From contig NIVC01003438.1 of NCBI GenBank assembly GCA_002269645.1, positions 1-64,000 of the forward strand: a stretch of DNA of 64,000 nucleotides, read 5' to 3'. The first letter of the stretch is position 1, and the number at the start of each line of letters is the position of its first letter. Below, one piece after another: positions 302 through 61,500 of this stretch. Position numbers and translations under genes: made by a program. The stretch is from Macrostomum lignano (taxonomy: Eukaryota). The notes beneath the pieces were generated by a model. It was not told where the DNA came from and made no database searches. It saw only the letters and a program-made list of their open reading frames with translations.

Positions 302-4994
<4,693 letters not shown>

Positions 4995-15139: not shown

Positions 15140-28983
<13,844 letters not shown>

Positions 28984-38000: not shown

Positions 38001-41000
38001 CTCTCCTACGATTTCTCACTCTACTTCTCAGCTTCTCCATGATTTCTCACTCTACTTCTCAGCTTCTCCATGATTTCTCACTCTATCTCTCAACCTCTCA
38101 ATGTTTTCTTAATCTACTTCTCAGCCTATCTATGATTTCTCATTCTACCTCTCAGCCTATCTATGATTTCTCATTCTACCTCTCAGCCTATCTATGATTT
38201 CTCATTCTACCTCTCAGCCTATCTATGATTTCTTAATCTACTTCTCAGCCTATCTATGATTTCTCATTCTACCTCTCAGCCTATCTATGATTTCTCATTC
38301 TACCTCTCAGCCTATCTATGATTTCTCATTCTACCTCTCAGCCTATCTATGATTTCTCATTCTACCTTTCAGTCAGCCTATCTATGATTTCTCACTCTAC
38401 TTCTCAGCCTCTACCCATCTCTCGCTCAGCCTAGCATTTTATTGATATCTACGCTCATAGCTGTTTCCCGGTCGCTGATTACTTATCTGCATTTCAAACG
38501 GCATTTCTTAGTCTCCCCTGCAGCTAATCCACTGTTTAGCATTAATCCCACCAGTGCAGCCCGGAAATCCCCAATGAAAAGGAAAATCTCAGCTTTAACA
38601 ATGTCTGATCCTATTTAACAGACAGTTTCTCCATCACTGTGCCTCATCTATCACATTTGGGCAACTGCCTGCCTCTGGGATTTTGCACCTCGCGCTGCCT
38701 TCCACCAAGCTTTTTTAGACTCCGATATGCGCGCTGACGTTGGTTCGCATTCTGGGGCGGGATTTTATTCCCCTAATTCCCTTGCCTTGGCCCTCTTAGC
38801 TCAGTCTGACGCCTCGCCTGCCTCTTTCCTCCTTATATTCTGCCCTGGCAGCTGACTGGGAGAGGATTCTGGGCGCCGCCATCTCTCTCTCGCATTGGTG
38901 ACTTCCATGCCCTCTATGGAGGCTGTATACTATTTTTTCCTCTTTCCCAATCTGCGATGTACTTTTGTAGAAGCCCAGTTTTCTAAGGATCCGATGGAGC
39001 GCGCTTTGTTGGTTTTTGGCTTCTGCCTTTCGAAACTTATTATATTGTGCTGCTTGCAGGATGAAGGAAGCTGGATGATGGACGGTATTTATCCATGAAG
39101 CTGGGGCTCTGCAGTCTCCAGTTACACGACTGTTCCATTTTCGGCTGCTTAAACTGGGGCATCGAGCTGATTTCTAAGAAATATTTTCAAGGCCCTTTTT
39201 AGCCTTTTTTAGTTTGAACACAGGTGACTGCTGAGGGAACATGCAGTCTCACTAAATTCTGTTCATTTAATTGGAATTTTCTCTCAACTATTTATCTCAG
39301 TAGTGAATATCTCAAATCCCAAATGTCTACAGCCTGTATTGGAGTCTCCTATCCTTTCTAGGAATCACCCAATTCCATTCCAGGAATCACCCAATTCCAT
39401 TCCAGGAATCACCCAATTTCATTCCAGGAATTACCCAATTCCATTCCAGGAATTACCCAATTCCATTCCAGGAATAACCCAATTCCATTCCAAGAATCAC
39501 CCAATTCCATTCCAGGAATCACCCAATTCCATTCCAGGAATCACCCAATTCCATTCCAGGAATGACCCAATTCCATTCCAGGAATCACCCAATTCCATTC
39601 CAGGAATCACCCAGTTCCATTCCAGGAATCACCCAGTTCCATTCCAGGAATCACCCAATTCCATTTCAGGAATCACCCAGTTCCATTCCAGGAATCACCC
39701 AGTTCCATTCCAGGAATCATCCAATTCCATTCCAGGAATCACCCAGTTCCATTCCAGGAATCACCCAGTTCCATTCCAGGAATCATCCAATTCCATTCCA
39801 GGAATCACCCAGTTCCATTCCAGGAATCACCCAATTCCATTCCAGGAATCACCCAATTCCATTTCAGGAATCACCCAGTTCCATTCCAGGAATCACCCAA
39901 TTCCATTCCAGGAATCACCCAGTTCCATTTCAGGAATCACCCAGTTCCATTCCAGGAATCACACAGTTCCATTCTAGGAATCACCCAATTCCATTCCAGG
40001 AATCACCCAATTCCATTCCAGGAATGACCCAATTCCATTCCAGGAATCACCCAGTTCCATTCCAGGAATCACCCAATTCCATTCCAGGAATCACCCAGTT
40101 CCATTCCAGGAATCACCCAGTTCCATTCCAGGAATCACCCAATTCCATTTCAGGAATCACCCAGTTCCATTCCAGGAATCACCCAGTTCCATTCCAGGAA
40201 TCATCCAATTCCATTCCAGGAATCACCCAATTCCATTTCAGGAATCACCCAGTTCCATTCCAGGAATCACCCAGTTCCATTCCAGGAATCATCCAATTCC
40301 ATTCCAGGAATCATCCAGTTCCATTCCAGGAATCACCCAATTCCATTCCAGGAATGCCCGAATTCCATTCCAGGATTCCTGGAATTCCTTGAATTTCTGG
40401 AATTCCTGGAATCTTATTCTTTCTGGTAATTCCGCCTGCCCCAGATTAATACTCTCTTAATCTCCATCCCCATTGTGCAGAGAGCGTCACGGAAGTGTCC
40501 CAATCAGAGCCGGGCACTTTCTACGGCCTGTTCTCCCTGCAGAACTCGCCGTCGCCCGCTGGTCACAGCGCCCTCTGTCGGTTCACCCTGGCGGAGGCGG
40601 AGGCCCTGATCGGCAGCTCAAACTTCATCCAGCTGGAGCAGTCGGGCCTGCTGTCCTACACTGCCAAGCGGCTGTCCCGAGCCGCCTATGCCGCAGCCTC
40701 CGGCCGGCCTCGGCCCACCCTGTGCGAGTGGACTCCCGAGGAGGCCAGGCAGTTGAAGCTGAGCAATCTCAAAGTTGAGCACACGGCACCGCTGATGGCC
40801 AGGCCGCTGATATCCAACAGTTTGGTCACCTTTGACGCCGCGCCGATCGGCCAAGGCGGAGTCGCTTCGCTGTGTCGGGTGGCCGAGACCGAGCAGGGAG
40901 ATGTGCTGGCGGTTGGGACAGGTGCGGCTGGGTGGCATCTGCTTGTTGCTATGCGAGATCTGCTTGTTGCTATGCGAGATCTGCTTGTTGCTATGCGAGA

Positions 41001-44000
41001 TCTGCTTGTTGCTATGCGAGATCTGCTTGTTGCTATGCGAGATCTGCTTGTTGCTATGCGAGATCTGCTTGTTGCTATGCGAGATCTGCTTTTTTCTATG
41101 CGGGATCTGATAGTTGCTATGTCATGTGGGATCTGGTAGTTGCTATGCGGGATATGGTAGTTTGCTATGGGGGATCTGGTAGTTGCTATGCGGATCTGGT
41201 AGTTGCTATGCGGGATCTGGTAGTTGCTATGTGGGATATGGTAGTTGCTATGTGGGATATGGTAGTTGCTATGCGAGATGTAGTAGTTGCTATGCGAGTT
41301 GTAGCAGTTGCTATGCGAGATGTAGTAGTTGCTATGCGAGATGTAGTAGTTGCTATGCGAGATGTAATAGTTGCCATGCGAGATGTAGTAGTTGCTATGC
41401 CAGATGTAGTAGTTGCTATGCGAGGTGTAGTAGTTGCTATTCGAGATGTCAGTAGTCGCTATGCCAGATGTAGTAGTTGCTATGCGAGATGCGGTAAATG
41501 CTAAACTGGATCTGGTTTTTGCTAGGCTGAGGGTCCGGTATTTCTTTGTGTAAAATGTAAGTTTCTCTGCAGAATTACTGTTTGGAACAATCGGTACAAG
41601 GCGATATTCAGTTCTGTTTAATTACACAGAATCGCTCACGTATTTTTTGCGTCTGAACTGCTACTTCAGGCAGAAAGCATTCGCTAGACAGTTTAGATCG
41701 AAAAGATCATTGCTAACTTATTCATATCTTCTGCTACTTTTAACTCTATCAGTTATCCATATAGTTGTGCCATGCCTGAGGCGCGTGTGCAAACAAAGTA
41801 TCTGTTTTTGCGTGGCTTCTTTGAAGGGAGCTTCATGCGGGGGAGTGACGACACTCGGATGGCGCAGTGGCTACAGTTGAGGCCTAAGAGATCGAATGAC
41901 TGCTTGCTTGGGTCTGGCTTGCTTCTTTCTGCTTGGCTGCGTCCTTGCTTTTTGCGCACAGCTTGTCACAGTGTGCGACTGTCTGTCTCTCTGAGTGTCT
42001 CTCAGTCTCTCTGAGTGTCTCTCAGTCTCTCTGAGTGTCTCTCAGTCTCTCTGAGTCTCTCTCAGTCTCTCTGAGTCTCTCTCAGTCTCTCTGAGTGTCT
42101 CTCAGTCTCTCTGAGTGTCTCTCAGTCTCTCTGAGTCTCTCTCAGTCTCTCTGAGTGTCTCTCAGTCTCTCTGAGTGTCTCTCAGTCTCTCTGAGTGTCT
42201 CTCAGTCTCTCTGAGTGTCTCTCAGTCTCTCTGAGTCTCTCTCAGTCTCTCTGAGTCTCTCTCAGTCTCTCTGAGTGTCTCTCAGTCTCTCTCAGTCTCT
42301 CTGAGTGTCTCTCAGTCTCTCTGAGTGTCTCTCAGTCTCTCTCAGTCTCTCTGAGTGTCTCTCAGTCTCTCTGAGTCTCTCTCAGTCTCTCTGAGTCTCT
42401 CTCAGTCTCTCTGAGTGTCTCTCAGTCTCTCTGAGTCTCTCTCAGTCTCTCTGAGTGTCTCTCAGTCTCTCTGAGTGTCTCTCAGTCTCTCTGAGTCTCT
42501 CTCAGTCTCTCTGAGTCTCTCTCAGTCTCTCTGAGTGTCTCTCAGTCTCTCTCAGTCTCTCTGAGTGTCTCTCAGTCTCTCTGAGTGTCTCTCAGTCTCT
42601 CTCAGTCTCTCTGAGTGTCTCTCAGTCTCTCTGAGTGTCTCTCAGTCTCTCTCAGTCTCTCTGAGTCTCTCTCAGTCTCTCTGAGTGTCTCTCAGTCTCT
42701 CTGAGTGTCTCTCAGTCTCTCTGAGTCTCTCTCAGTCTCTCTGAGTGTCTCTCAGTCTCTCTGAGTCTCTCTCAGTCTCTCTGAGTGTCTCTCAGTCTCT
42801 CTGAGTCTCTCTCAGTCTCTCTGAGTGTCTCTCAGTCTCTCTGAGTGTCTCTCAGTCTCTCTGAGTGTCTCTCAGTCTCTCTCAGTCTCTCTGAGTGTCT
42901 CTCAGTCTCTCTGAGTGTCTCTCAGTCTCTGAGTGTTTCTCAGTCTCTCTGAGTGTCTCTCCGTCTCTCTGAGTGTCTCTTAGTCTCTCTGAGTGTCTCT
43001 CAGTCTCTCTGAGTCTCTCTCCGTCTCTGAGTGTCTCTCCGTCTTTCAAAAATGCATCGTGTTTATTTTTGTTTTGTCATAATGATTCGTCTCAAACTAT
43101 TCTTCCAGATTCCGGCTCCCTCATCAAGTTTTTTGTCCCAGCAGCATCATCATCAGCATCATCAGCAGCATCATCAGCAGGTGCAGCAGCATCATCAGCA
43201 GCTGTAGCAGCGCAGGCGCACCAAATCGAAACCCTCCAGCTGTTCCCTCCGGGCAGCGGTGCCCGCATTGACAGTCTGTCCGCCCGTGCTGGTCGTCTGT
43301 TTGCCGTCTCGGACAGCGTGGGCGCCGCCGTGTGGCTGGCCGAGTCGCGCTGCAATCGGCAGGCCGGCTGTGTGGCCTGCGTGTCGCTGCGGGACCCCCG
43401 CTGCAGCTGGCGGTTGGACCTGCGGGAGTGCGCGTTTGCTGCGGAGCCTGAGGGGTGAGCAGCGATTGGGGCTTGGCGTTCACCGTGACTTTAGAAGGAG
43501 GCGTTCAACGTGACTTTAGAAGGAGGCGTTCACCGTGACTTTAGAAGGAGGCGTTCACTGACTTTAGGATGCGTTCACCGTGACTTTAGAATGCGTTTGT
43601 TCATTTTGACTTAAAAAGGCGTTCACCGTATCTGCAGTGATCTTAGATGCATTCACTGAGTTTTAAAGGCATTCACAGGCGGTCAAATGTGAATAATAGG
43701 CGACTATGCGAGATTTCACAGTGATGGATTACCGCTGGAATCTCATTAAAGCTTCAAAGCTCTTCACTTTCCAGTCTGACCAACGCGTCCTCCGGGCATC
43801 ACAGCGGCTGCCCCATCAGCTCAAGAGACCTGAACAGCCGTGAGTTGCATTCAGAATATGCTATTATCATTAGTACACCTGCACTTTTACCTCTCCCCAA
43901 TGCTCTGCCGGCTTTTAACTGCTGCAGGCCTGCCATCGCTCGCTCCACCAACGCGGGGGGCCTCGCAGACCTCGGCGCTGCCGCCCCTCCTTGGAGCGTC

Positions 44001-44979
44001 TGGCGGCAGCCTGACCGACTCTGCGTCACTCGCGGCAGCAATGAACTCCGACGGAGTCAGCGGAGTCCCAGTCGGCAAATTCGTGGCCGCCCTCATCGCC
44101 CTGTGCCTGCTCTGCTTCTCTGTCGGCTTCTTCTTGGGCTGCTTTGTCCGGCGCCGGCGCAACGTGCGGCGGGATGTCGGCAGAGGCGGCGCTGAGGGCA
44201 GCGCAGCGGAGAGGGAGAAGTGCATCGGCGAGGTTCCGGCCAACTGCCACGGTGCTGCGGCTGCTGCGGCTGCAGGTGAGACTGAAGGACTTGCTGGGTC
44301 TGAGGTTGTCCGGTTCTTTCAGGTTCAGGGCTAATGTCAGGGCCAGGGCCAGGGCCAGGGCCAGGGCTAGGGCTAGGGCTATTGTCAGGGATATTGTCAG
44401 GGCTAGGGTCAGGACTAAAGAGTCAGGGCTAGTGTCAGAGCTAAAGCTAGGGTCAGGGCTAGGGTCAGAACTAAAGCTAGGGTCAGGACTATAGAGTCAG
44501 GGCTAGGGTCAGGACTAGGGTCAGGGCTAGTGTCAGAGCTAGTGTCAGAGCTAAAGCTAGGGTCAGGGCTAAAGCTAGTGTCAGGGCTAAAGCTAGTGTC
44601 AGGGCTAAAGCTAGTGTCAGGGCTTTCCTCAGCAGTTGAGCGCCCGTCCTCTCACCCGCCATTTTTCCCCACCGCAGGCGACGTGCCGCTGCGGCTCCGC
44701 CGGTCCCAGCACGGAGAGCGCGGCCACCAGGCGGTGTCAAACGAGTACACGGAGCACCCGCCGCAGGCAGTGGCCTCTTACGCCACCCCGCCAGCGGTCC
44801 CAGCCGTGATGAGGATCGTCAGCAGCCACTCGTCGGCTCTGGACAGCTATCAGAGCTGCAGCGCCGATGTGCCCGCCATCGATGATGTTGACGAGGACGA
44901 GGAAGAGAACTCCGGGATGCACACTCGGCGCGGTCAGCCGATCGGAGACCATCGAGACAATGACTGGAGACACATCTAG
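32069..44979 (+). CDS. Transmembrane semaphorin (signal peptide, Sema, PSI, TM, cytoplasmic tail; class 1/6-like, no Ig domain), 10 exons, ~819 aa
   Basis: Exons 32069-32186, 32260-32350, 32439-32700, 32993-33337, 33476-33617, 40481-40921, 43109-43454, 43775-43839, 43928-44275 and 44678-44979 total 2460 nt and are phase-compatible. Motifs: signal MHYKIIIIFSLIVLLTIWSATSSYA; YLGGFNALYRV; EKLYALFVEEAFE; TRLARICLNDPGG...MTSFFKLRLIC; FYGLF...SALCRF; RPRPTLC; PSI CNRQAGCVACVSLRDPRCSW; TM FVAALIALCLLCFSVGFFLGCFV followed by RRRR. Confidence 0.92.
32729..32892 (+). mobile_element. tRNA-derived SINE with a CORE-like central domain, in semaphorin intron 3
   Basis: A box tagcatagtgg and B box ggttcgattccc, then gtgtccttgagcaagacaccttaactctgcattgcttcagttcacccagctgtaaaatggg, which resembles the MIR/CORE consensus (gaccttgggcaag...cttaac...ctgtaaaatggg). 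Confidence 0.8.
33712..34300. repeat. 25-bp minisatellite (cccttgacatctcgccttagactcg)
   Basis: Period 25; semaphorin intron 5. Confidence 0.9.
35285..35800. repeat. ~44-bp pyrimidine-rich minisatellite (ctctatctatatctaatctcacgtccctctcttctcc...)
   Basis: Direct reading. Confidence 0.87.
36503..37428. repeat. 15-16-bp minisatellite (tgtgactttatgagct)
   Basis: Direct reading. Confidence 0.93.
37985..38412. repeat. ~31-bp minisatellite (tctatgatttctcattctacctctcagccta)
   Basis: Direct reading. Confidence 0.87.
39358..40378. repeat. 22-bp minisatellite (aggaatcacccaattccattcc), ~45 copies
   Basis: Direct reading. Confidence 0.95.
40935..41492. repeat. 21-bp minisatellite (ttgctatgcgagatctgcttg, drifting to gatgtagtag variants)
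   Basis: Starts ~13 nt after the donor site at 40922. Confidence 0.92.
41985..43040. repeat. 20-bp minisatellite (ctctcagtctctctgagtgt) with an internal CTCAG/CTGAG inverted repeat
   Basis: Direct reading. Confidence 0.95.
44335..44622. repeat. AGGGCY-based simple/minisatellite in the last semaphorin intron
   Basis: agggccagggcc and agggctaaagctagtgtc units. Confidence 0.82.
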
Positions 44980-48121: not shown

Positions 48122-49159
48122 TCAGAAGCCTCTAAGCTTGTGAGCTCTTTCCGGATCGAAGCTGACTTGGCGTGAAAGCTGGTCAACTTTCTGCGGAACA
48201 ACACGATACAGGCTGTTTCTCATCCAAACAGGGTTCCTCTGCAAGTGGTCGCTCACATTTGTCATGATAGTACTGAGGTCGAGCTCACGGAAGTTTTTCT
48301 CGATGAAATCGCAAACAGTCTGCACGTACAGCGAACCCGTGTTGATGCTTCTAAAGGCGACTGAGCCTGGACTGTTGGCGTAGCAGACCATAAAGTCGCT
48401 CTCTGGGGTACAGACTGTGAGGTTGTACCTTGATTCTTCTCGCGAATAGGAAGCAAAAGTTCGATCCTGGCGGCTTCCGCGACCGGCCTGAATGAAGAAC
48501 ACCTTTGGCTTTCCTTCTAGGCTTCGGCAGACAGAGGTCTGTGATGCGATGGTAGTGGCGGTAAAGTCTTCAGCCTTTCAATAGTGAATTCCAGTCTAGT
48601 CCAGACTTTTGCAAATGCGAGAAACCAATTCTTTTTCAGACAATATTACATTTTGTTTCAATATCATACTCGTACATTTCTATACGGAGCTATTTGAATA
48701 ACCCTATTATTGCATATATCTAGATAACCATAATAGAAGCTAAGCATGTATTTTTGGCTTACCTGAAACCTTTCGGTCACTTTTCGAATTTCGTAGGGAC
48801 ACCCGTCCCTACCGTAGATGCAGTCGTGGCTGCCGTGCGCCATCAGGAAGCAGACAAAGCTGCCGTGCTTGGCAAGGTCTCGTGACTTTTTAATCTCACT
48901 GAGGAAATCATCCAACTGCTCAGTAGTAAGGTCTTTTTTTATCTTGACGATGAAGCGCAGCCTCTCGAATACCCGTTTCGCTTGTTCAACATCACGATCA
49001 GAACCCTTACGCTCTGTGATACTGAATGTGATGTCACTTCCGGACTCGTACTTGCTGATGTTGATGATCAGGCAGTAGCCTTGCGGGTCCGTCACTGGAT
49101 AGAAATCTCCCTCGAGCCTGGAATGCAGCAGACGCTCAATATACTCGTAATTTTTTATA
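48122..49159 (-). CDS. Caspase (peptidase C14A) p20/p10 domain exons, probably catalytically inactive (QAGRG)
   Basis: YPVTDPQGYCLIIN...RKGSDRD...FVCFLMAHG...CRSLEGKPKVFFIQAGRG...SDFMVCYA...AFRSINTGSLYVQ; intron 48762-48539 (gtaagc...cag). Confidence 0.93.
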
Positions 49160-52100
49160 CTGACAACAAAAACATAAATTATGTAGTAGCACCTTGGTGG
49201 TTGATGTCGAACTATTTTGGCTCGCATAGCTCCGCTGAAGTTTCTAAAAAGTTTTTTTTCATTGTCAAAGGGAAATTCATTTGAACTATTCAATGAGTGA
49301 ATATTTGTTAGCAGTTTTCACTGGACAAATAAAGTAACATCGACTCACGGATCTGCTTCCTCCGCTGTATCATCTCTTGGTTCCTCCGAATGGTCCGTGA
49401 CAATTTTTCGCCTGAAATGGTCAAAAAACTTTGTAGTCTATTAGCTATGCTTGCAGAAGCTGTGTGTGATGTAGCTGTGTGCTGTAGCTGTGTGCTGTAG
49501 CTGTGTGCTGTAGCTGTGTGCTGTAGCTGTGTGCTGTAGCTGTGTGCTGTAGCTGTGTGCTGTAGCTGTGTGCTGTAGCTGTGTGTGCTGTAGCTGTGTG
49601 CTGTAGCTGTGTGTGCTGTATCTGTGTGCTGTAGCTGTGTGTGCTGTAGCTGTGTGCTGTAGCTGTGTGCTGTAGCTGTGTGCTGTAGCTGTGTGCTGTA
49701 GCTGTGTGTGCTGTAGCTGTGTGTGCTATAGCTGTGTGCTGTAGCTGTGTGTGCTGTAGATGCGTGTTGTAGCTGTGTGCTGTAGCTGTGTATGCTGTAG
49801 CTGTGTGTCCTGAAGGAACTCACGGCAGTGCCAGAGGCTCGTTGAAGTAAACCTTGCCTTCGTAACTAAAATTGCAGAGTGGAGTCTGAAGTCAGGGGAA
49901 TTGAGGGTGAGCACCCTTGCTCCATGCTTCATTCTATGTTTTATCAATCTTCACTCTGTTCAACTGCCGAGCTTGCAACGTTCCAATTCTTTACCGTTGA
50001 AGTGATCTTAATTTAAGCATGTTATGCCCAATGTTATTTTTTAGTCTAATGCGAACTTCAGAAGGTTTTTCTATCAGGAAAGTACAGCACATGCTTGTGC
50101 ACCAGTAAAGATCCTATTGCGTGAAGCGAACACCAATGAAATGCGTTATAGAAATCATATATATACTAGCGTTCAGTGAGAATGAAGCCTCTCTCCAGTT
50201 TTTCCCGGTTCTCGGCTCTCCGCCTCTTTGCCTCCTCAACTGCTCCGCTAGCTTGCCCCAACAATCGGGCCTGAACTCTAATATCCCGATTTAACAGAGA
50301 TAAATCCGGACAAACGTCAATTCGTGCAACAATATCGATAAGTAGCCTGTGGCTCCATTTTCACTGAATTGCTTAACAAATTTGCGTAATTGCGTGATCA
50401 ATATCCTATTAGGAATTGCTACTAACATTGATTAGTAATAAACATCTTGTTGAAGGTTAGAGATCGAGAGAAACAAATCGAACCTCCGACTTATTTGATT
50501 CAACAGCAACATCAACGATCATAGTCATCGTCAGAGGGGCACACCCCCGCAACACATTATTCTAAAACATTTGACCGTAATAATACAGAAAAGTACAACA
50601 AAAACTGCCCCATTTTACGAGCGTAAGTTAAAACTATTTTTTTCACAGCAAAATGCTTGCTGCGCTGGTGTCTCACCATAGACCGTATATTCCATGGGCC
50701 ACTCACTATTAAAACTACTCGTATGTAAAAATTAAACCACTTTAAAGCTCACTTTCAGGGATTTATTGACATAGATTTTATTTTGCGGGATTTAATCGAT
50801 CACTTTCCCGGGCATATTGCAAGGATTATTGTATGTATGTAAATAAGCGAGCTTCTCTCTTCTCTTCCTTCGTGACTCGAGACATTTCTTAATGAAATTT
50901 CGTCTATGGTAAGAATGTGGGGGCTTCGCCTCTACACCCCAGCAGGGGCTTCGCCCCCACACCCCCATCCCCAACTTCAACCATAGACATACAAGTACCC
51001 CGAAAAAAGCTAGAAAAATCTTTAGGCCGACCACAGTCGCTGAAAGTTTAAGTTCAGTAGCTGAGGGACATAGAAAGTATTTTTGCAATGGAGAAGAAAT
51101 ATAAATTTATTTCAGTTGCACGAAGATACAGAAACTTCACAACCGCTAAAAAGACTGCCGTATATGAAAGTAAGTGAAAAAATTTGACACTTTTCTGTAA
51201 AAGCGGCAAACCTTTTAGGCAGACTTGAATATGCCTCTGCTTCTGCCACGGCTTCTTGGAAACTCAGAACTTTGTGGTCCTTGACGATGAGTTTTCCGAT
51301 GACAGCTTGGTTGCCGAGACAGCAGTTTAGGTCACGCAAGCGCTAATCTTTAATCAAGAACTAACAGAAGCCTTTAGTTGTTGGCACCATGATCTCACGC
51401 AGGGCCGTCTGGAGGTCATTGAACGACTTGCTTCCAGGTTTGTCTGGCCGCCGCGCTATCTGCCGATTTTTCGTATAGAGCCGGCGACAGTCGCAGCAGC
51501 AAGACTTGAGCTCGTGCGGCTGGATCCCAGTTGAACAATGCGGCTCCAATCTCAAAGCCAACGATCCAAATTGGCCGTCTCCTCGAGTCTTCCAACCTCA
51601 GACATGCCCGACGTTGGACTCCACTTTGGGTGACGCTCTGGTTATCACTCGGAGTTGCTCGTGACTGGGGGCTGCTTGAAGACACTGCTCCATTGCGGCT
51701 TGCAGAAATTGTAGCCGAATTGGTTCTTGCCTGTCCAAAAGACTTTGTTGGATCCCCTGCTGTCTTGGCTGGCTCCTTGCTCATTGCGTCAGGTTAGAAT
51801 CGCTGCGACGCCAATACTACTACTGAGGCTGTGTTTATTTGAGTTGCAGCTCGCAGCCGATAAACTACGTATTTTTCTGCTCAGCCGTAGGCCGTGCTCC
51901 AGAGCTTTCTATCTTAATAAATTAGCTTCTAAATTAGTATGAGCATAGTAAACTTCCAACTAAGAAAAATACATTAGCCTGTGTTCTGAATTTTTATGTA
52001 TGGCCAAGCTACTACAAAAATGTGAAAAATGCCCACTCAGAGCAACTGCAGTCAGCTGCTCAATATTCAATCATAATTTACAGCACATATAGTTTTCATA

Positions 52101-54099
52101 CATACATTCTCAGACATTCTCATTCTCAGTCGCCATGAAAACTCACCCACGCAGCAGCTCAGCCAGTCTCCAGTTTCTCTTTTGTGTGGCCAAGGCTAGC
52201 GCAGTCCTATACTTATTGTTCTTCAGGCTCCAATCCGCCCCTGAGTCCAGCAGAACCTGACTGACGTGCTGGGGCGCCCAGCAGGTTACTGCCTGTATGA
52301 GGGGTGTGTATTCACACTGATTCCTCGCATTGGCGGAGGCTCCGGCAGCCAGCAGAGCGGAAGCTGCGGCAGAATTGCCATCTTTGACTGCATGATGCAA
52401 ACAACTGTCAGCAGCAGTATTCGCACAGGTGGGATCACCAAGCTCCACCAGCTGCTTCCACAGAGCCTCATCACTCCTCCAAGCTTCGTTCATCGCAATA
52501 TAACCCCGTCTGTCATAAGCATCCATCTCCACCAGCTTCATCCGATCCTCAGCATTGAGCTGAGCTACGCCCATCAACGCGGTGAGACCCAAAAAGTCAG
52601 GCAGGTCGCAGCTGTCGCGGGTCGCTGCTCGTCGCAGTCCCGCCAAGTCGCGCGCGTTCACCAGCCGCTGCAGCTTCTGTCGATCCGCCTCCTCCTGCAA
52701 AGACGAACGGAAACTTTGAGCACAGCTACTCAGCTGCTGCAACATCAGCACCGCAGATTCCACTCACCTGAGCTGTCAGACCGGAGATAGTGCCATATTC
52801 ATCCACAACTAGCCGCATCTCCCTGCAACAGCAAAAATGAGCAGCGATGCGAATATGCAATTTTCTAAAATATGACAATTCCGATTGACAAAAAATTTAC
52901 TTTAATAAGGTCTAGATAATTTTTCATGATAAATTTAGTAAATGGAAATTCCTACTTATCTGAGCTGCTTACAGATGGAGTTTCCAAGAGGACTGCAGCA
53001 GCTCTGCAACAATCAGCATTGGCGAGAGCGCATCCGACTTCTCACACGCAGCTCATTTTCCATTTCTGCAGCATTAGTTTCCTTCCATCTCACAATGTCT
53101 CACAAAGCACTCACGCACAGCCTCCCAGTTCTCCATCTGCAGCTCAACCCACACACTCTCACTGCACACCGAGGCCCTACAGCTTCCATTCTTGACTGAG
53201 ATCAACCGGCACCCCATTGGCTGGGAGGCAGCCAGCTTATCAAGCAGCGAACTGCTCACTCACCGCTTGATGTAGCTGGCCAGCTCTGAGTGGCCGCTGA
53301 GCCTCGCCAGTGCGGACGCTGTCCAATCTTCGAGATCTTTCAGTCTGAGCAGCCGCGACCTCTTCGAGTTTCTGTGCTGTCTGCATTCATTGAACCTGTC
53401 CTGCCTCAGCAGGTGCAGCAGGTGCTTGGCGCATTTCCAGCTTCCAGTCCGCGCCGCCTCCATCAGCGGAGTGGCGCCGTTGTCATTCCGCAGCCACTTC
53501 GCATCGAACGACAGCAGCGTCAGCAGCCGCAGGTGGTCCCGCCGGGCTGCCAGGTGCGCAGCCGTGTTGCCGTTCGCGTCAGCTGCCTTGGGGATTGCGC
53601 CCAGCTCAAATAAGTACAAGATGCACTTTTCAGTGTGCACGGGAGTCTCAGGAGCGTCGGCCACCAGCATGAGGACGGTCCGACGATCTGCATCAGCGCT
53701 GGTGACCAGCTGGCGCGTTGCCAGCCGCCGCACCTTGCCGAAGTCACCTTGGATGACGAGCTGGGCGAGAGTGTGGAGATCGGCTGGTGAGTCTCCGACG
53801 CTTTCCCGGTTGCTGGGGTCCGGCTTAGTGAGTTGCTGCAACTGCAATTAAAGCATCTCTAACCTAAGTGCAAATCTTAGCACTGAAGTATTTTAGGAGA
53901 CTTGAATTTACGAGCGTATGAGCTACTGGAGTAGCTGAGAGATGACTAATTTATTACTAATTATTAGTTACTAATTACAGATTACTAGTCAATTTCAATA
54001 ACTTCAACTTACCGCTCTGTCAGAGAACATGGTTATTTTTTCGCTTTCTGACGAAGTGCTTGACGTGCTCAAAGAGCTTGAACTTGAAGAGCTGGACAT
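48122..54099 (-). CDS. Predicted ankyrin-repeat/caspase-domain fusion protein (catalytic Cys replaced by Gly), 8 exons, ~728 aa
   Basis: Exons 54099-54013, 53841-53264, 52822-52768, 52694-52147, 49865-49824, 49411-49349, 49159-48763 and 48538-48122 are all GT-AG and phase-compatible, totalling 2187 nt. The ANK-to-caspase junction (2.3-kb intron 52146-49866) is inferred from phase and splice signals only. Confidence 0.6.
49457..49808. repeat. 13-bp minisatellite (gctgtgtgctgta)
   Basis: Fills the intron between exons 49865-49824 and 49411-49349. Confidence 0.92.
51100..51800 (-). pseudogene. Frameshifted retrotransposon gag-like remnant (Ty3/Gypsy-type)
   Basis: Fragments in different frames: ...FEIGAALFNWDPAARAQVLLLRLSPALYEK, SKSFNDLQTALREIM, and LRDLNCCLGNQAVIGKLIVKDHKVLSFQEAVAEAEAY, the last resembling the gag pattern RD.F..GL....I..KL....LT..KAV..A. 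Confidence 0.5.
52147..53841 (-). CDS. Ankyrin-repeat exons (two clusters of about 3-5 repeats each)
   Basis: DANGNTAAHLAARRDH, NDNGATPLMEAARTG, DSCLHHAVKDGNSAAASALLAAGASANARNQCEYTPLIQA, GADWSLKNNKYRTALALA. Confidence 0.9.
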
Positions 54100-55513
54100 G
54101 GCAAAGCGCAGGGTGCTTGTTGGCGCAGGATGGCTGGGAAGTTCGGCATTGGGGCGGGGCAGGGACCTCTGCGGCAGATTTTATTGCTTTGGCTGCTCGC
54201 GGAGGACTGGCTGAGCGGCTTTGCTGTTCATCTCTTGCATTGTACTGAAGACCAGATAGGCAGGCTGCACAGTGCGCAATACGATGCATATTTTATGCTG
54301 TGCTGTGAAACAATAACTTCTCTTCTCATCTCACCCGTCTCTCTAATTAGCAACAGTCTTTCAAAAGCTGAGGTTAGCATTATCTAAAAATGGGCTTGCT
54401 GCCAGGACCATTAAATAGACAATGGGCAGGTATCCAATGGGCCGTTGGAAATTTAATTTTCTTCACGAATGCCAGAATGTTTTTTGTAATATAAAACAAC
54501 GAATGAACAAAATACGCTCGTAGTAGCAATTATAACGGTTAGAATAAATCGGCTTCAACGAATTATCACTACAATCAATTTAAAGACGCCACAACCCTCC
54601 CACTCTCAATCTCCATCTCGTAGGCTAAACGTTTGCATTTTTCTCAGCAGGTGGTACAGTATTCTGACCTGTCGATCCAAAAGGGTGGCCAACGCGAACA
54701 TCTGATAAGTTGACCCTGCAACCAATGCATTCCAGGCATAAAAAAGTTCGATCGCTCAATCTCGATTGGCTATTGTCGATTTAGGCTGCCCATTGTCGAG
54801 ATCAGTATCTTACCAAATGGTATGTAGGTGTGTCATCGCTATTGGCTTGATTTGTGGCATCCTGACCTGACTCCATATCCACAAAGAATTGTGTTGTGTC
54901 GTGTAACTTGACAGGCCAACTTCATTATAATTATTACGCTAATGTTTCTGGTATAACGTAAATGCTAATTATAGTATTAATATTATTCCTGTCATTTACT
55001 TATACTGCCACTTTAAGTAGAGTAGTTGATAAAGTACCTGTACAATTTATCACTAATCACGCTACATCTTTGGCTCTTGAATTTATCGATCGTGCAGTTT
55101 CTCTAGCGTGAATAAAATATCGATCATGTCGTTTTTCTAAAATGCTAAATACACTAAAGTCTAAAATATATATAAAGCAACTGTGCGCACCTAGAAATTT
55201 ACTCTGCAACTCATCTGGAAACTTCAAGTCTCGGCTATACAACAAATTGCAGTTGAACGACAAATCAATTTCATCAATATCGACTAAATTTCCACGAGTA
55301 GAAAGTGGTTAAAACCTGCTCCGGTTAGTTAGTTTTTGATGCCTTATCTGATTTTCCAACACTGCACATCTGTTTATATAGGCCTATGACATTTGAACTT
55401 TTACAAATCCTCTTGCTCTTTGAAATCTTTGCAGTTTGACGTGTGTATGCCGATGTCTATGGCCAGAAAGTCAGAGGTCACATATAACGGTCTCGAGGCG
55501 AGCGAGATGAGAC

Positions 55514-56946: not shown

Positions 56947-57218
56947 CAGTGGCGGATCCAGAGTTTCATTTTGGGGGGGGGGCGGTCCAAGTTTGGGGCG
57001 CCAACACAAGTGGAAGGGGCGCCAATTTTTAAGCTAGGGGGCGCAAAAAATGCGCGTAGGGGGGGGCGAAAAATCAAGCTTAGGAGCGCAAAAAATGCGT
57101 ATAGGGGGCGAAAAATCACGTTTAGGGGGCGAAAATTTAGGTTTTTGGGGGGCGCAATATGTTCGGTCAAGCTATTTGGGGGGGGGGGCGTCCCCCCCCC
57201 CCCCTATATCCGCCCCTG
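56947..57218. mobile_element. hAT-like MITE (272 bp) with a perfect 8-bp target-site duplication
   Basis: TIRs cagtggcggatcca / tatatccgcccctg; TSD atatcagg at 56939-56946 and 57219-57226. Confidence 0.85.
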
Positions 57219-57392
57219 ATATCAGGTACATGAAATTGACCAGAAAGAAATTTCTGTGCTTCATTTTATAATTATGAGTGATGTTTTGAGCTTCCTGCAG
57301 TGTCTGAACGGTTTCCATAGCTACTGGGAAAACACTTGGTACTTGGCAGTTTCTGTTGGGAGCGCGAGGTTTTCCAGCACGCGGTTCATTAC

Positions 57393-57920
57393 GGACTGAC
57401 TGACTGACTGACTGACTGACTGACTGACTGACTGACTGACTGACTGACTGACTGACTGACTGACTGACTGACTGACTGACTGACTGACTGACTGACTGAC
57501 TGACTGACTGACTGACTGACTGACTGACTGACTGACTGACTGACTGACTGACTGACTGACTGACTGACTGTCTGACTGACTGACTGACTGACTCACTGAC
57601 TGACTGACTGACTGACTGACTGACTGACTGACTGACTGACTGACTGACTGACTGACTGACTGACTGACTGACTGACTGACTGACTTGAGTGAGTGGGTGA
57701 CTGACTGACTGACTGACTGACTGACTGACTGACTGACTGACTGACTGACTGACTGACTGACTGACTGACTGACTGACTGACTGACTGACTGACTGACTGA
57801 CTGACTGACTGACTGACTGACTGACTGACTGACTGACTGACTGACTGACTGACTGACTGACTGACTGACTGACTGACTGACTGACTGACTGACTGACTGA
57901 CTGACTGACTGACTGACTGA
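57393..57920. repeat. (GACT)n microsatellite
   Basis: Direct reading; source of the SQSV pseudo-ORFs. Confidence 0.97.
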
Positions 57921-58593
57921 ACTCTAATTTCTGAATAAAGCATGGAATGTTTAACAAATGCTATTGTGTTTGACAACAGAGTAAAATTCAAACAATTCAT
58001 TTCTTTCTTAGATGGAATTTTAATGAATGTGAGTGAAAGAAAACCAAACAATTAATTCAATTAAATATTGATGAAAGAAGCTGACTCCGATCATGGAACA
58101 TTTCAACAGAGTGAATTCAATATTGAAAAGTCTTGCAATAACTTCGTAAATAATTTTACCATTTTTACTACAGCTGTCGAACGCAAGGTGAAGTGAAATT
58201 GGAAAAATCGAAAACATCGGAGTGCAATGGCGCTCAGTGGGCTGCTAAGGAAAGCAGAATTGGTTAACTTTATTATTAAGAAATTTATGTATATATTCTG
58301 GCTAAAATATGATTGAACTGTCAATTTGTTAGTAAAATCGCAATTCCCAACGAATTCGACAACAATGGAACTGCCATTATTATTTGCCTAGCAATTTCTC
58401 AGTGTTTTTATACTCTGAGCTCTGAGTTTCAAACGCACTCTGTGCTCTCGTGCTAATTCTCGATTTAGCTGAGAGTAAATTTGTGTCGGCAGTGTCGGTT
58501 GAAGAATTAAGTAAAAATATTCTTGAATTAAAAAACAATTATCTGATACCAGCTTATAAGTACGACAGTTTTCATTTTTCGTTTCAAAAATTC

Positions 58594-61500
58594 CTATGGT
58601 TGTTCGCTCCAGTTTTCCTGAAGTCTCGCCTTCAGCCAATTGGGAAGATCTGCTCTCATCATCTTCAGTTTCTTTTTTATTTCCTGAATCTGCTCCAGAT
58701 TCGAAGAATATAAAGCAGCAACCAGCAGCTCCTGCTCATCCGAGTCCTCTCTTTCAGCCACATCCCGGATCCAGTCCTGAGCGCGCGCTTCTCGATCAGT
58801 CCGCAGCTCTAGCCGCAAAGCCCACAGCAGAGCGTCAAAGTTCATGTAGCAATACTTATAACTGTCTAAAAACTGGAGGGGAAAGCACTGCCGCAGAGCT
58901 CGTGTCAAGAACTCGAGTCTCGGTTGCTGGTCGAACCAAAAGCAAAACTTCCACGCCGAGTCGCGGCTGCTCAGATGCCACATCACGAACTCCACAGTCG
59001 CTTCAGTCGCCGACTTCTCACGAGACCAAGCGATGCCTCTGCTCACCGAGTGATCTGAGCACGAGCTCACGACTCTCTCTGCAGTTTCTCGGTCATCAAA
59101 CTTCAGGCAAGCCAGCGCTCTGAGAGCCTCCCGTGCTGAGAGGGCGCAGTCTGGCAGTCTGGCAATCAGCTCTGTGAGCGACTCCTGAGATCGCTGGCTG
59201 CAGTCACTGCGCGAAAGACGCACCAGACACTCTCTCACCACGTCGTAGATCTGATAGTACTCGAGAGCATTGGACTCCGTGAGGCGCATCGGACTCAGAT
59301 CCGGCAGGATTTGGAACGGGTGGAAGTAGAATGTGCCTGAGTCGCTCACAGGTCTGAGACTGCCGATGAACTGCTGCAGCAGTTGGGGCAGCCGATCGAT
59401 TACTGTTCTCAGTGTGCTTATGATGCCGTCCAAATGCTGGTCCGCTCTCTCCTTAGCCGCACCCTTGAGGTAGATGGCCGCATCGCTAAGAAAGAAATGG
59501 TTCATGATGCGACCCCGAGATCGGTCAGGTGTGTCAGGTGTTTGTCTGTCCTGCTCTCGGCTCTTCTCCACACAGTCGAGCAGCATCTGCAGCGACTGTC
59601 TCGTGAGACTCACGAGGTTCTCCTTCTTCCACTGCTCGACCGGCGTCTCATCCACCATTCGGAAGGTGATGGTCTTCACGTGGTAGGACTTCAAGCCTCG
59701 CTGATTGAAGCCATCTTTGTGACAGATGACCTTCTTGACCAGGTATTTGAGTGTGACGAACAGTTGGCCTTGCAGGGTAGTGAGACTTCGCAGCATCCGG
59801 TTCTCCAGGAAGCTGGTGCTCACGCGGAGCTCTTCGCCCCCTCGGTCAGGAGAGGCTGCGTACACCACGTGACAGGGCGATGAGGCGGAGGTGAGAACTT
59901 TCCGGAGAGCCTCCAGCACAGGATAGGGGACGTTTGAGACGCGGTTTGGCAGCAGCGGCGCGATGGGCGGGTAGCGGCAGAGACGGCATGCAGAGACATT
60001 GTCCAGCGCTGGCTTCAGTGTGCATCCGGGCGTCGAATGAGCAGGATTTGAGGCTGTAAAAACGATTCGGTTCCCGATGGGGCAAAATACAGCTTTGAGC
60101 CTGTGCAGTGATGCTTTGGACTGACATACCAAAACCGCTCAAAAAAATGGCACGATATTTGCAGCCACCCTAAACTCACTACGGAGAAGGTCTTATGTTA
60201 CCTTAAAATTGCCTAAATTCGAGTCCTTCTTAACTGAAAGTGCAAAAAGCTAACTTGCGTAATTTTTAACTGAATCCTCCATAGCGTTGCTCCACTTGTA
60301 CCAATGCTACTCAAACATGACACTTAAAATCTTGCCAAGTTTTCTTACATTCTTGCCAGAATGGACTAACCCCAGCACACGGAACTCAAGGACATGCTTG
60401 AACCATTTATTGTGAACCTTCTTAAACAAGAACTTCTACTGTCAATTTGCACTTTTAATATTAAATTATATTTTACCACTCCTCACTTGTGTTCTTTATT
60501 AGTTTTGCTGATGTTTTGCATCCCTACACTGCTTAGTTTCTGTAGAACACTTAAACAGTATCATTACTTTTCTCTCGTACGAGTTTGCCACCGCTTCTTA
60601 TCATTTTACATCAAAGCTACATATTAATCAGAACTCCTTGCTTCCGATTTTAAAATGCAAATGTATCAGCTCTATCCTAACAAAGCTTTGTTTGAGCATG
60701 ACTTTAGATTTCAAAATTTCATGCTTAACCCCGCCAACACTGATGGCACGCCAGGCGTGCCATGGGTCTCATTTAACCATACACTGAGAATACGTGTCTA
60801 TGGCCCAGATGGTTTAGCATAAATATGACTTTTCGACATCCCCATAAGTCACGGATGGCATGCTGTGCGTACCATGTTATTTTTTCGCAATTTTTTAACT
60901 ATATTTGACTGCAAGTACAGGATAGGTAACAAAAAATTTAAAAAAGGACAACAACAGAACAAAAAACAATTAGGTAAACAATATTTAAAACATCGATGAG
61001 GCATTTAGGAGGAGCGTTTTGAATTTCGTATTCTGAACGTAATTAAGTTTTGCACCGTACCACCAGTGCAACTACTGTGCTGCTGCAGTGTGCCAATTCT
61101 GAAAGCATGGGACAGCACACAGCCCGGGCTCTCCTGGGCAACCAGCGCATACGAACACCGTTCTTTTGGCCACACCATTGCTGTAGCAGACTCTGCATCG
61201 CTTTGTCGGCCTCGCATTGGCATCTGTCGGCGGCAGCTTCGATGGCGCGTGCTGTGAGATGGCCTTGCGCTTTGATGTATTCAGACGTTTGCCCCGGCCT
61301 GTCTGCTCCATGAGAGTACGGATCGCAGCTTCCAAAAATTCAACGAATTTGATATCGCTTCCTCCTTGGCAATTGCAGATCCAGGCATTGCGGACCAACT
61401 GCAGCAAAATGTGGAACCCGAGCTTCTGGTGCCATCTGTATGTTCTTCTCCCCGCACTGTAAGGCTGCAGTGCTGCATCAAGGCGATCAACGCCTCCCAT

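What the first reader, a model, noticed from the sequence alone, without database searches (positions are those of the whole stretch)
48122..54099. Ankyrin-repeat prodomain fused to a caspase domain: an unusual caspase architecture
Animal caspase prodomains are typically CARD or DED. Here two ankyrin clusters end …WRLAELLRG|gtgagt (phase 2). The next phase-2 acceptor exon (ttttag|T TAC GAA GGC…, 49865) leads through two micro-exons (YEGKVYFNEPLALP, RKIVTDHSEEPRDDTAEEADP) directly into the caspase p20. The result is one 728-aa ORF with an acidic linker. No independent start exon for the caspase was evident. It could be a sensor/adaptor in which ankyrins provide recognition and the dead caspase provides dimerisation or decoy output.
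Basis: partly seen in the sequence, partly recalled or inferred. Interest (0 to 1): 0.8.

Follow-up and report, generated by a model that had tools for sequence, protein, structure and literature searches.

The report
Flatworm ankyrin-caspase with dead active site
This is a real, transcript-supported gene of the free-living flatworm Macrostomum lignano that joins an ankyrin-repeat module to a caspase domain whose catalytic cysteine has become glycine; the architecture is already described in flatworms, so it is a new, probably non-cutting member of a known kind.

Summary
Nine GT/AG exons on the minus strand (54099-48122) give one 731-aa ORF: a Ser-rich N-terminus, an ankyrin module of about 400 aa, a disordered acidic linker of about 45 aa, and a caspase-3/8-like domain. 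The ORF equals GenBank protein BOX15_Mlig016858g2 of Macrostomum lignano, whose annotation is built from RNA-seq. The ANK-to-caspase junction is genuine: the 42-nt micro-exon is conserved in paralogs, and many paralogs at other loci share the architecture. The active site reads QAGRG (Cys to Gly). About 30 paralogs keep QACRG or QACRT. A second 98%-identical copy also has Gly, and between the two copies the caspase domain shows dN/dS 0.27 (P=0.027). This suggests a retained non-catalytic role, perhaps like c-FLIP, rather than decay. The architecture is not new. 'ANK caspases' were reported in Schistosoma (2014) and across flatworms (2024), though said to be restricted to parasites. New here are their expansion in a free-living flatworm, the dead variant, and an ANK module shared and exchanged with MAP3K-like kinase genes. 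Orthology to the parasite clade was not tested. Interest is moderate.

The parts
48122..54099 (-). Whole coding region (ATG to TGA) of the ANK-caspase gene, 9 exons, 731 aa. It equals M. lignano BOX15_Mlig016858g2 (PAA51405.1).
54013..54099 (-). Exon 1: start codon and Ser-rich N-terminus (MSSSSSSSSLSTSSTSSESEKITMFSDRA).
   Evidence: AF2 pLDDT is below 50 for aa 1-19.
53264..53841 (-). Exon 2: first ankyrin cluster (ANK1, aa 30-221).
   Evidence: Pfam Ank_2/Ank at aa 101-172. AF2 helical repeat with pLDDT above 90. It is 84% identical to the neighbouring paralog.
52768..52822 (-). Exon 3: 55-nt exon (REMRLVVDEYGTISGLTAQ) linking the two ANK clusters.
   Evidence: Conserved in paralogs.
52147..52694 (-). 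Exon 4: second ankyrin cluster (ANK2, aa 241-422), ending ...WRLAELLRG in phase 2.
   Evidence: Pfam Ank_5/Ank_3 at aa 337-409.
49866..52146 (-). Intron 4 (2281 nt), the long intron between the ANK exons and the micro-exon. Apart from its first ~136 nt, which match the L001 paralog's intron, it matches nothing else in the window or in L001/L002. It holds a 122-aa ORF without Pfam hits.
   Evidence: The sister copy g1 carries a further 1.76 kb here.
49824..49865 (-). Exon 5: 42-nt micro-exon YEGKVYFNEPLALP. It is the conserved last exon of the ANK module, shared with the ANK-kinase paralogs. The intron after it is the point where caspase and kinase effectors differ.
   Evidence: P0006 ...LRGYDGKIYFYEPLALP|kinase and P0005 ...YDGKNYFDEPQAMP. 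It is a separate 42-nt exon in the ANK-kinase gene too (L004 9065-9106).
49463..49807 (.). Minisatellite in intron 5: 13-nt unit TGTGTGCTGTAGC, 25.5 copies.
   Evidence: A similar repeat appears to have been translated into the N-termini of the paralog models P0040 and P0041.
49349..49411 (-). Exon 6: acidic linker (RKIVTDHSEEPRDDTAEEAD).
   Evidence: AF2 shows aa 434-477 as disordered. A homologous linker R[KR]V[VF]TDH..EEPSDDE occurs in group-A paralogs.
49193..49243 (-). Exon 7: linker (PNFSGAMRAKIVRHQPP). It contains an in-frame ATG at 49227-49225.
48763..49117 (-). Exon 8: caspase large-subunit (p20-like) part. It includes Arg (ERKG) and the catalytic His569 (CAC, 48837-48835).
48122..48538 (-). 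Exon 9: the active-site strand, the inter-subunit loop, the p10-like part and the stop codon. The pentapeptide is QAGRG.
48482..48484 (-). Codon 612, GGT (Gly), at the position of the catalytic Cys (caspase-3 Cys163).
   Evidence: Alignment to caspase-3. All other family members have Cys. The sister copy g1 has the same GGT.

Best explanation
The locus is one gene of Macrostomum lignano. It encodes an ankyrin-prodomain caspase in four parts: an ANK solenoid of about 400 aa, a conserved 14-aa micro-exon, a flexible acidic linker of about 45 aa, and a caspase-3/8-like protease fold. It belongs to a large, tandemly and segmentally duplicated, lineage-specific family. In that family the same ANK module is joined either to a caspase, to a MAP3K-like kinase, or to both. 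The ANK module takes the place that CARD or DED domains hold in classical initiator caspases. It is therefore most likely the recruitment or recognition part that brings the protease domain to a partner or platform (inferred). In this paralog and its 98%-identical sister copy the nucleophile Cys is replaced by Gly, so the protein cannot cleave substrates; this follows from established caspase chemistry. The His, the Asp-binding Arg/Gln/Arg residues, the fold, the ORF and all splice sites are kept. The dead domain has evolved under purifying selection since the two copies split. I therefore think it acts as a non-proteolytic regulator of its catalytically competent relatives, such as Mlig015407g1. 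It could pair with their protease domains or compete for the ANK ligand, in the manner of c-FLIP toward caspase-8. Shown: gene structure, architecture, loss of Cys, paralog family, selection signal. Inferred: recruitment role of ANK and the regulator or decoy mechanism.
For: Gene model and exact match to the transcript-derived annotation. Domains. AF2 model: pLDDT 80.8, ANK aa 27-422, disordered linker aa 434-477, caspase fold aa 480-727. Foldseek TM 0.8-0.89 to caspase-7/3/8/9. The junction is conserved in paralogs at other loci. Cys to Gly occurs only in this gene and its sister copy, among about 30 family members examined. The same GGT is in copy g1 on another contig and in two models from the independent ML2 assembly. 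Caspase-3 R64, H121, Q161 and R207 equivalents are kept. Purifying selection on the dead domain: dN/dS 0.27, 6 synonymous versus 6 nonsynonymous changes, binomial P=0.027 between the two Gly copies; 0.27-0.33 against the neighbouring paralog. An intact QACRG close relative exists as a possible partner (P0338).
Against: The selection signal rests on 12 substitutions only and is borderline. The Cys to Gly change is a single transversion. The family shows birth-and-death evolution: the neighbouring paralog on the same contig carries a nonsense codon in p20. The ANK module evolves fast (dN/dS 0.6-1.25), which could mean relaxation rather than diversification. There are no protein-level, expression-level or interaction data. 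Nothing shows that ANK caspases of any flatworm act as initiators. An in-frame ATG in exon 7, or internal SL trans-splicing, could also yield a caspase-only product.
Confidence: 0.55

Rival explanations
1. Young, decaying duplicate. The gene is real and transcribed, but loss of the catalytic Cys is the first step of pseudogenisation in a redundant, rapidly turning-over family. The protein would have no function of its own.
For: The neighbouring paralog has a premature stop. There are many near-identical copies and tandem arrays. The ANK module has dN/dS near 1 against close paralogs. Only one nucleotide separates Gly from Cys.
Against: Two copies keep complete 731-codon ORFs and all 16 splice sites. 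The caspase domain has dN/dS 0.27 between the two Gly-bearing copies (P=0.027). The substrate-pocket residues and the His are intact. The gene is present in the transcript-based annotation, which dropped novel transcripts below 0.5 RPKM that lacked de novo transcript support.
Confidence: 0.27
2. Annotation or read-through artefact. An ANK-only gene and a separate short-prodomain caspase gene (start at the ATG in exon 7) are merged into one model. The mature mRNAs would be separate, for example through SL trans-splicing.
For: The intron between the ANK exons and the micro-exon is 2.3 kb. There is an in-frame ATG at 49227-49225. M. lignano has polycistronic precursors resolved by trans-splicing. 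ANK-only paralog models exist (P0005).
Against: The micro-exon after the long intron belongs to the ANK module, not the caspase, and is conserved next to ...AELLRG in kinase- and caspase-bearing paralogs. The phases of all nine exons fit. The TBONE pipeline cuts transcriptional units at experimentally mapped trans-splice and poly(A) sites, and it left this gene whole. The same architecture recurs at independent loci with junction introns of 0.4-0.5 kb.
Confidence: 0.06
3. Pathogen or stress sensor family. The fast-evolving ANK module is a ligand-recognition surface under diversifying selection, coupled combinatorially to death (caspase) or stress-signalling (MAP3K-like) outputs. The dead-caspase member would be a decoy or negative regulator within that system.
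For: The ANK module has dN/dS 0.6-1.25, against 0.27-0.48 for the catalytic domains. The ANK and caspase trees are incongruent with 99% and 86% bootstrap support. Architectures include ANK-kinase, ANK-kinase-caspase, Ras/Roc-caspase and LRAT-caspase. The kinase is closest to MAP3K5/ASK1.
Against: There is no site-level test of positive selection. High dN/dS may simply be relaxed constraint. No expression or infection data exist. ANK repeats are generic interaction modules.
Confidence: 0.12

Closest known systems
ANK caspases of platyhelminths (first noted in Schistosoma, Lee et al. 2014; defined as a clade in Genome Biol Evol 2024, PMC11463336)
   Same: An N-terminal ankyrin-repeat pro-domain in place of CARD or DED, followed by a p20/p10 caspase domain. 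The phylum is Platyhelminthes. The caspase domain is nearest to caspase-8/10 and caspase-3 types, in line with the published placement next to DED caspases.
   Different: The paper states that ANK caspases are restricted to parasitic flatworms and absent from free-living ones. For M. lignano it reports only one 'kinase pro-domain' caspase. Here a free-living macrostomid has many ANK caspases in tandem arrays. That kinase-type caspase (P0092) itself carries ANK repeats. This member lacks the catalytic Cys. Whether the Macrostomum genes fall inside the published clade or arose independently was not tested, because I could not retrieve a neodermatan sequence.
c-FLIP(L) (CFLAR), the vertebrate caspase-8-like pseudo-protease
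   Same: It has a caspase-fold domain without the nucleophile Cys, retained under selection beside catalytically active close paralogs. The proposed mode of action is heterodimerisation or competition.
   Different: c-FLIP has tandem DEDs and has also lost the catalytic His and the pentapeptide. Here the pro-domain is ANK and only the Cys is changed (QAGRG, His kept). There is no evidence of heterodimerisation. The origin is independent.
ANK-kinase paralogs of M. lignano (e.g. BOX15_Mlig015152g1, P0006), with a STE/MAP3K5-like kinase domain
   Same: The ANK module is 70-73% identical, including the 42-nt micro-exon, with the same exon structure up to that exon. ANK1 dS is only 0.11.
   Different: The C-terminal effector is a protein kinase instead of a caspase.
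Human caspase-3/-7 (effector caspases, MEROPS C14A)
   Same: These are the best sequence and structure matches for the protease domain (E 6e-34, TM 0.8-0.89). H121, R64, Q161 and R207 equivalents are conserved.
   Different: Here the pro-domain is about 475 aa instead of about 28 aa. Cys163 is replaced by Gly. The IETD-type inter-subunit cleavage site is not conserved.

Membership tests
Caspase family (Peptidase C14A, Pfam PF00656) | Caspase/hemoglobinase fold with p20-like and p10-like parts | tested here: met
   PF00656 at E 1e-42, 147 bits against a cut-off of 21.4. phmmer to caspase-3 gives E 6e-34. The AF2 model matches caspase-7/3/8/9 at TM 0.8-0.89.
Caspase family (Peptidase C14A, Pfam PF00656) | Catalytic dyad His (SHG/AHG) plus Cys (QACxG) | tested here: not met
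   His569 is present (FVCFLMAHG). The Cys position is Gly612 (QAGRG, codon GGT at 48484-48482). So this is a caspase homolog by descent but not an active peptidase.
Caspase family (Peptidase C14A, Pfam PF00656) | P1-Asp pocket residues (caspase-3 R64, Q161, R207) | tested here: met
   They align to the R of TERKG, the Q of IQAG and the R of VAFRS in the phmmer alignment.
Platyhelminth ANK caspases (PMC11463336) | Ankyrin-repeat pro-domain N-terminal to p20/p10 in one polypeptide | tested here: met
   Ank_2/Ank/Ank_4/Ank_5 lie within aa ~100-420 and Peptidase_C14 at aa 488-696 in one ORF that equals the transcript-derived annotation.
Platyhelminth ANK caspases (PMC11463336) | Caspase domain falls in the monophyletic ANK-caspase clade, sister to DED caspases | not tested
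   No neodermatan ANK-caspase sequence could be obtained. The top 150 of an exhaustive search held only M. lignano ANK+caspase proteins. A profile search returned caspase-8/10/3. The paper's supplements are not held.
Platyhelminth ANK caspases (PMC11463336) | Restricted to parasitic flatworms, as stated by the authors | tested here: not met
   The host is the free-living M. lignano. This bears on the published distribution, not on the architecture.
c-FLIP-like pseudo-caspases | Caspase-like domain lacking the nucleophile but retained under selection | tested here: inconclusive
   The Cys is lost. dN/dS is 0.27 between the two Gly copies, P=0.027, but from only 12 substitutions.
c-FLIP-like pseudo-caspases | Tandem DED pro-domain and descent from caspase-8/10 | tested here: not met
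   No DED hit in Pfam; the pro-domain is ANK. Any similarity is functional analogy only.
c-FLIP-like pseudo-caspases | Heterodimerises with, and modulates, an active paralog | not testable with these tools
   This needs co-expression or pull-down with, for example, Mlig015407g1 (P0338).

The most novel reading that the evidence does not exclude
M. lignano has a lineage-specific, rapidly evolving ANK 'receptor' module that is repeatedly re-coupled by exon shuffling or gene conversion to alternative outputs: a caspase, an ASK1-like MAP3K, or both in one protein. This would form a modular death and stress-signalling system not described in animals. In it, the Cys-to-Gly ANK-caspase (two retained copies) would be an independently evolved FLIP-like brake. 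It would also mean that ANK caspases predate parasitism in flatworms, or arose twice.
Probability: 0.22. Interest if true: 0.65.

Novelty: new member of a known kind. Interest (0 to 1): 0.42.

Why it matters
Caspases with ankyrin pro-domains are the least understood branch of the flatworm cell-death machinery. They have been proposed as a parasite-specific replacement for the lost DED-caspase/FADD route. A free-living, genetically tractable flatworm with transgenesis and RNAi carries a whole family of them. That family includes a naturally dead member under selection and kinase-bearing siblings with the same ANK module. This corrects the reported distribution. It also offers an experimental system for asking what the ANK pro-domain binds and how such caspases are activated or restrained. 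It does not change the general picture of caspase biology.

Tried and rejected
1) I looked for more copies in the window by tblastn and found only this gene.

2) A first tblastn against 'L001' appeared to show overlapping ANK and caspase reading frames. This was an artefact, because the file held two loci (L001 and L002). It was resolved.

3) I tried to obtain parasite (neodermatan) ANK-caspase sequences for a joint phylogeny.
- The word-indexed search with the caspase domain gave 14 hits, mostly M. lignano.
- The exhaustive representative search listed only M. lignano ANK+caspase proteins in its top 150.
- The profile search returned vertebrate caspase-8/10/3.
- The paper's supplements are not held.
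Orthology is therefore left untested.

4) I checked whether intron 4 is a repeated transposon. Apart from its first ~136 nt, which match the L001 paralog's intron, it matches nothing else in the window or in L001/L002, and its 122-aa ORF has no Pfam hit.

5) P0002 could not be located on a contig. The sister copy was instead reached through the cluster listing.

6) A Biopython bootstrap timed out and was replaced by a numpy implementation.

7) I considered that Gly612 could be an assembly error. I rejected this because the same codon is present in a second contig of this assembly and in two models of the independent ML2 assembly.
Full report
WHAT IS THERE

The region lies on the minus strand of a eukaryotic genome. 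All are bounded by GT...AG and all have compatible phases. Together they give one 2196-nt ORF of 731 aa.

Pfam finds ankyrin repeats (Ank_2, E 2e-23, plus Ank, Ank_3, Ank_4 and Ank_5) within aa ~100-420. It finds Peptidase_C14 at aa 488-696 (E 1e-42). The protease part is most similar to human caspase-3 and caspase-7 among solved structures (E 6e-34).

In that alignment the equivalents of caspase-3 R64, H121, Q161 and R207 are conserved. Cys163, however, is Gly: the pentapeptide reads QAGRG, with codon GGT at 48484-48482.
- The ORF is 731 aa, not 728.
- Three small exons, not two, lie between the ANK exons and the p20 exon.
- Exon 7 contains an in-frame ATG (49227-49225).

WHOSE GENE IT IS, AND IS THE FUSION REAL?

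The 731-aa model is identical over its full length to GenBank PAA51405.1, 'hypothetical protein BOX15_Mlig016858g2' of the free-living flatworm Macrostomum lignano. The window is the first 64 kb of contig NIVC01003438.1 of assembly Mlig_3_7. The annotated CDS spans exactly 48122-54099.

That annotation is not ab initio. It is a genome-guided transcriptome built with STAR, StringTie and TACO. The TBONE step cuts transcriptional units at experimentally mapped spliced-leader and poly(A) sites (PMC5730564). So the exon junctions, including the 2.3-kb intron 52146-49866, come from RNA-seq, and the pipeline designed to split polycistronic precursors left this gene whole.

Independent support comes from paralogs:
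- The 14-aa micro-exon that follows the long intron (YEGKVYFNEPLALP) is not caspase sequence. It is the conserved end of the ANK module. It directly follows ...AELLRG in kinase-bearing paralogs (P0006...LRGYDGKIYFYEPLALP|kinase), in ANK-only models (P0005) and in other ANK-caspases (P0003, P0338, P0049). In an ANK-kinase gene it is likewise a separate 42-nt exon.
- Paralogs at other loci, only about 45% identical (P0004 on NIVC01004683.1), have the same order ANK1 - small exon - ANK2 - micro-exon - linker - p20 - p10, with junction introns of 0.4-0.5 kb.
- A second full-length copy (Mlig016858.g1, PAA63914.1, contig NIVC01001804.1) has the same nine exons and is 719/731 identical.

I put the 'two separate genes' reading at about 6%. 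What remains open is an additional caspase-only isoform from the exon-7 ATG or from internal trans-splicing.

STRUCTURE

AlphaFold2, run with an alignment of 34 paralogs, gives mean pLDDT 80.8 and pTM 0.62. The model has four parts:
- a continuous helical-repeat solenoid over aa 27-422, mostly with pLDDT above 90;
- a disordered segment at aa 434-477, which is the acidic linker encoded by exons 6-7;
- a caspase fold over aa 480-727;
- two disordered loops at aa 499-509 and aa 613-638, the latter being the inter-subunit loop.

Foldseek against the PDB returns caspase-7, -3, -8 and -9 with target-normalised TM 0.8-0.89.

THE FAMILY AROUND IT

On the same contig, about 35 kb away and in the same orientation, lies a paralog (P0003, L001 4946-9734). 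It keeps QACRG but has an in-frame stop in the p20 exon (FIVKVK*DLT). An intact 698-aa copy of that type exists elsewhere (P0338, QACRG). A third ANK exon follows in L001. Contig NIVC01004683.1 carries two ANK-caspase genes in tandem.

In every family member I could inspect, about 30 proteins, the pentapeptide is QACRG or QACRT. Only this gene, its sister copy g1, and the two corresponding models from the independent ML2 assembly (P0336, P0002) read QAGRG. The Gly is therefore real and predates the split of the two copies.

M. lignano also has other fusions:
- ANK-kinase-caspase proteins (P0092, three copies);
- kinase/ANK/caspase proteins (P0079, P0183);
- Ras/Roc-caspase (P0053, P0203);
- LRAT-caspase (P0073, P0082).

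The kinase of the ANK-kinase paralogs is STE-group, closest to MAP3K5/ASK1.

MODULE EXCHANGE

The ANK module of this gene is 70-73% identical to those of ANK-kinase paralogs, but only 37-51% identical to those of the other ANK-caspases. In a bootstrapped NJ tree of ANK modules, P0001 and P0003 group with 15 ANK-kinase or ANK-only members at 99%, excluding all other ANK-caspases.

In the caspase-domain tree, by contrast, the core ANK-caspases form one clade (86%). This gene sits in a 100%-supported subgroup with its neighbour (91%). Synonymous divergence tells the same story. ANK1 of this gene differs from ANK1 of an unlinked ANK-kinase gene by dS 0.11. The caspase exons differ from those of the tandem neighbour by dS 0.24-0.43.

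The ANK module and the effector domains thus have different histories. The intron after the 42-nt micro-exon is the exchange point, by exon shuffling or gene conversion.

SELECTION

Against the neighbour, Nei-Gojobori dN/dS is 1.25 for ANK1, 0.83 for ANK2, 0.27 for p20 and 0.33 for p10. Against ANK-kinase P0006 the ANK values are 0.69 and 0.81. Two kinase genes compared with each other give 0.58 for ANK2 and 0.48 for the kinase domain. The ANK module is therefore fast-evolving across the whole family, and the catalytic domains are more constrained.

The most direct test of the dead caspase is the comparison of the two Gly-bearing copies. The caspase domain has 6 synonymous and 6 nonsynonymous differences, giving dN/dS 0.27 and a one-sided binomial P=0.027 against neutrality. 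The whole CDS gives 0.45 (P=0.038). Introns differ by 1.3%. This is a small sample. Still, it points to continued constraint after loss of the nucleophile.

HOW IT MOST LIKELY WORKS

Shown:
- a single gene, with an ANK solenoid, flexible linker and caspase fold;
- the nucleophile lost, the pocket and His kept;
- two intact copies;
- purifying selection on the dead domain;
- close catalytically competent relatives.

Inferred from established caspase biology: long pro-domains recruit caspases to activating platforms, and c-FLIP modulates caspase-8 by pairing through its inactive protease-like domain. By analogy, the ANK module would be the recruitment or recognition element. This paralog would be a non-proteolytic regulator or decoy of the active ANK-caspases. 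I give this 0.55.

The main rival is that it is a young duplicate on its way to decay (0.27). A more ambitious reading is a sensor family under diversifying selection (0.12). It is not excluded, but it lacks any site-level or functional support.

COMPARISON WITH WHAT IS KNOWN

The architecture is not new. The 2024 Genome Biol Evol study of lophotrochozoan apoptosis (PMC11463336) describes 'ANK caspases' as a maximally supported, platyhelminth-specific clade, sister to DED caspases and first noticed in Schistosoma (Lee et al. 2014).

The same study states that these caspases are restricted to parasitic flatworms, that free-living flatworms lack them, and that M. lignano has only one unusual caspase with a kinase-like pro-domain. 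My results disagree with that distribution. M. lignano GenBank proteins include many ANK-caspases, and proteins of the kinase-caspase type (P0092 and its copies) themselves carry ANK repeats N-terminal to the kinase.

I could not retrieve a parasite ANK-caspase sequence. Whether the Macrostomum genes are orthologous to that clade or a convergent invention is therefore untested.

VERDICT

This is a correct observation of a real gene. The architecture is already known in the phylum, and the gene is already deposited as a hypothetical protein.

New elements:
- presence and expansion in a free-living flatworm;
- a naturally dead member kept in two copies under apparent constraint;
- an ANK module shared and exchanged with MAP3K-like kinases.

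Novelty: new member of a known kind. Interest: 0.42.

Noticed in passing
L001 8377-8880 (contig NIVC01003438.1, about 88.9 kb, outside the window): The neighbouring ANK-caspase paralog (P0003) keeps QACRG but has an in-frame stop in the p20 exon (FIVKVK*DLT). An intact copy of the same type (P0338, Mlig015407g1) reads E at that position. This looks like a copy-specific pseudogene or nonsense allele. It also gives the highest ANK dN/dS values (1.1-1.7).
   Followed up: partly
window 58594-60132 (-): A 512-aa ORF with a Mab-21_C (HhH/H2TH-like) domain hit (E 2.5e-5, just above the Pfam cut-off). It lies about 4.5 kb upstream of the ANK-caspase on the same strand. It may be part of a Mab-21/cGAS-like gene. 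No gene is called there in the deposited annotation.
   Followed up: partly
window 61072-62799 (-): An intact 575-aa piggyBac-type transposase ORF (DDE_Tnp_1_7, E 8e-62, plus the zf-Tnp_2 zinc finger).
   Followed up: partly
window 49463-49807: A 13-nt minisatellite (TGTGTGCTGTAGC x 25.5) sits in intron 5. A similar repeat appears to have been translated into the N-termini of the ML2 gene models of paralogs (P0040 'ATTQLQHT...', P0041 'AHTATAHTATAH...'). If so, it is conserved in this intron across group-A paralogs.
   Followed up: partly
window 38122-44979 (+): An annotated Sema-domain (semaphorin-like) gene of 813 aa lies on the opposite strand downstream of the ANK-caspase. It contains long coding-frame-open minisatellite arrays (39303-41504).
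   Followed up: no
window 574-1350, 15140-15826, 16771-17583, 21497-22291, 27346-28955, 57172-57957: Numerous long minisatellite arrays give spurious ORFs in several frames (for example the [23 protein letters not shown] and SQSV repeats). GC skew and AT skew swing strongly across them.
   Followed up: no
L006 (contig NIVC01001804.1) versus window 48122-54399: The sister copy g1 is 99.8% identical over the first ~2.5 kb (exons 1-4 and introns 1-3) but only 96-98% identical over the rest. It carries an extra 1.76 kb in intron 4. This suggests recent gene conversion of the 5' (ANK) half, or a mosaic history.
   Followed up: partly
M. lignano proteins P0053/P0203, P0073/P0082, P0092, P0079/P0183: Caspase domains in this species are also fused to Ras/Roc GTPase domains, to LRAT (NlpC/P60-like) domains, to ANK plus kinase, and to kinase/ANK combinations with two caspase-domain matches. 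Some may be merged gene models, but several recur on different contigs.
   Followed up: partly
window 51416-51784 (-): A 122-aa ATG-initiated ORF lies inside intron 4 on the gene's strand (MSKEPAKTAGD...). It has no Pfam hit. The intron itself has no further copy in the window or in L001/L002.
   Followed up: partly
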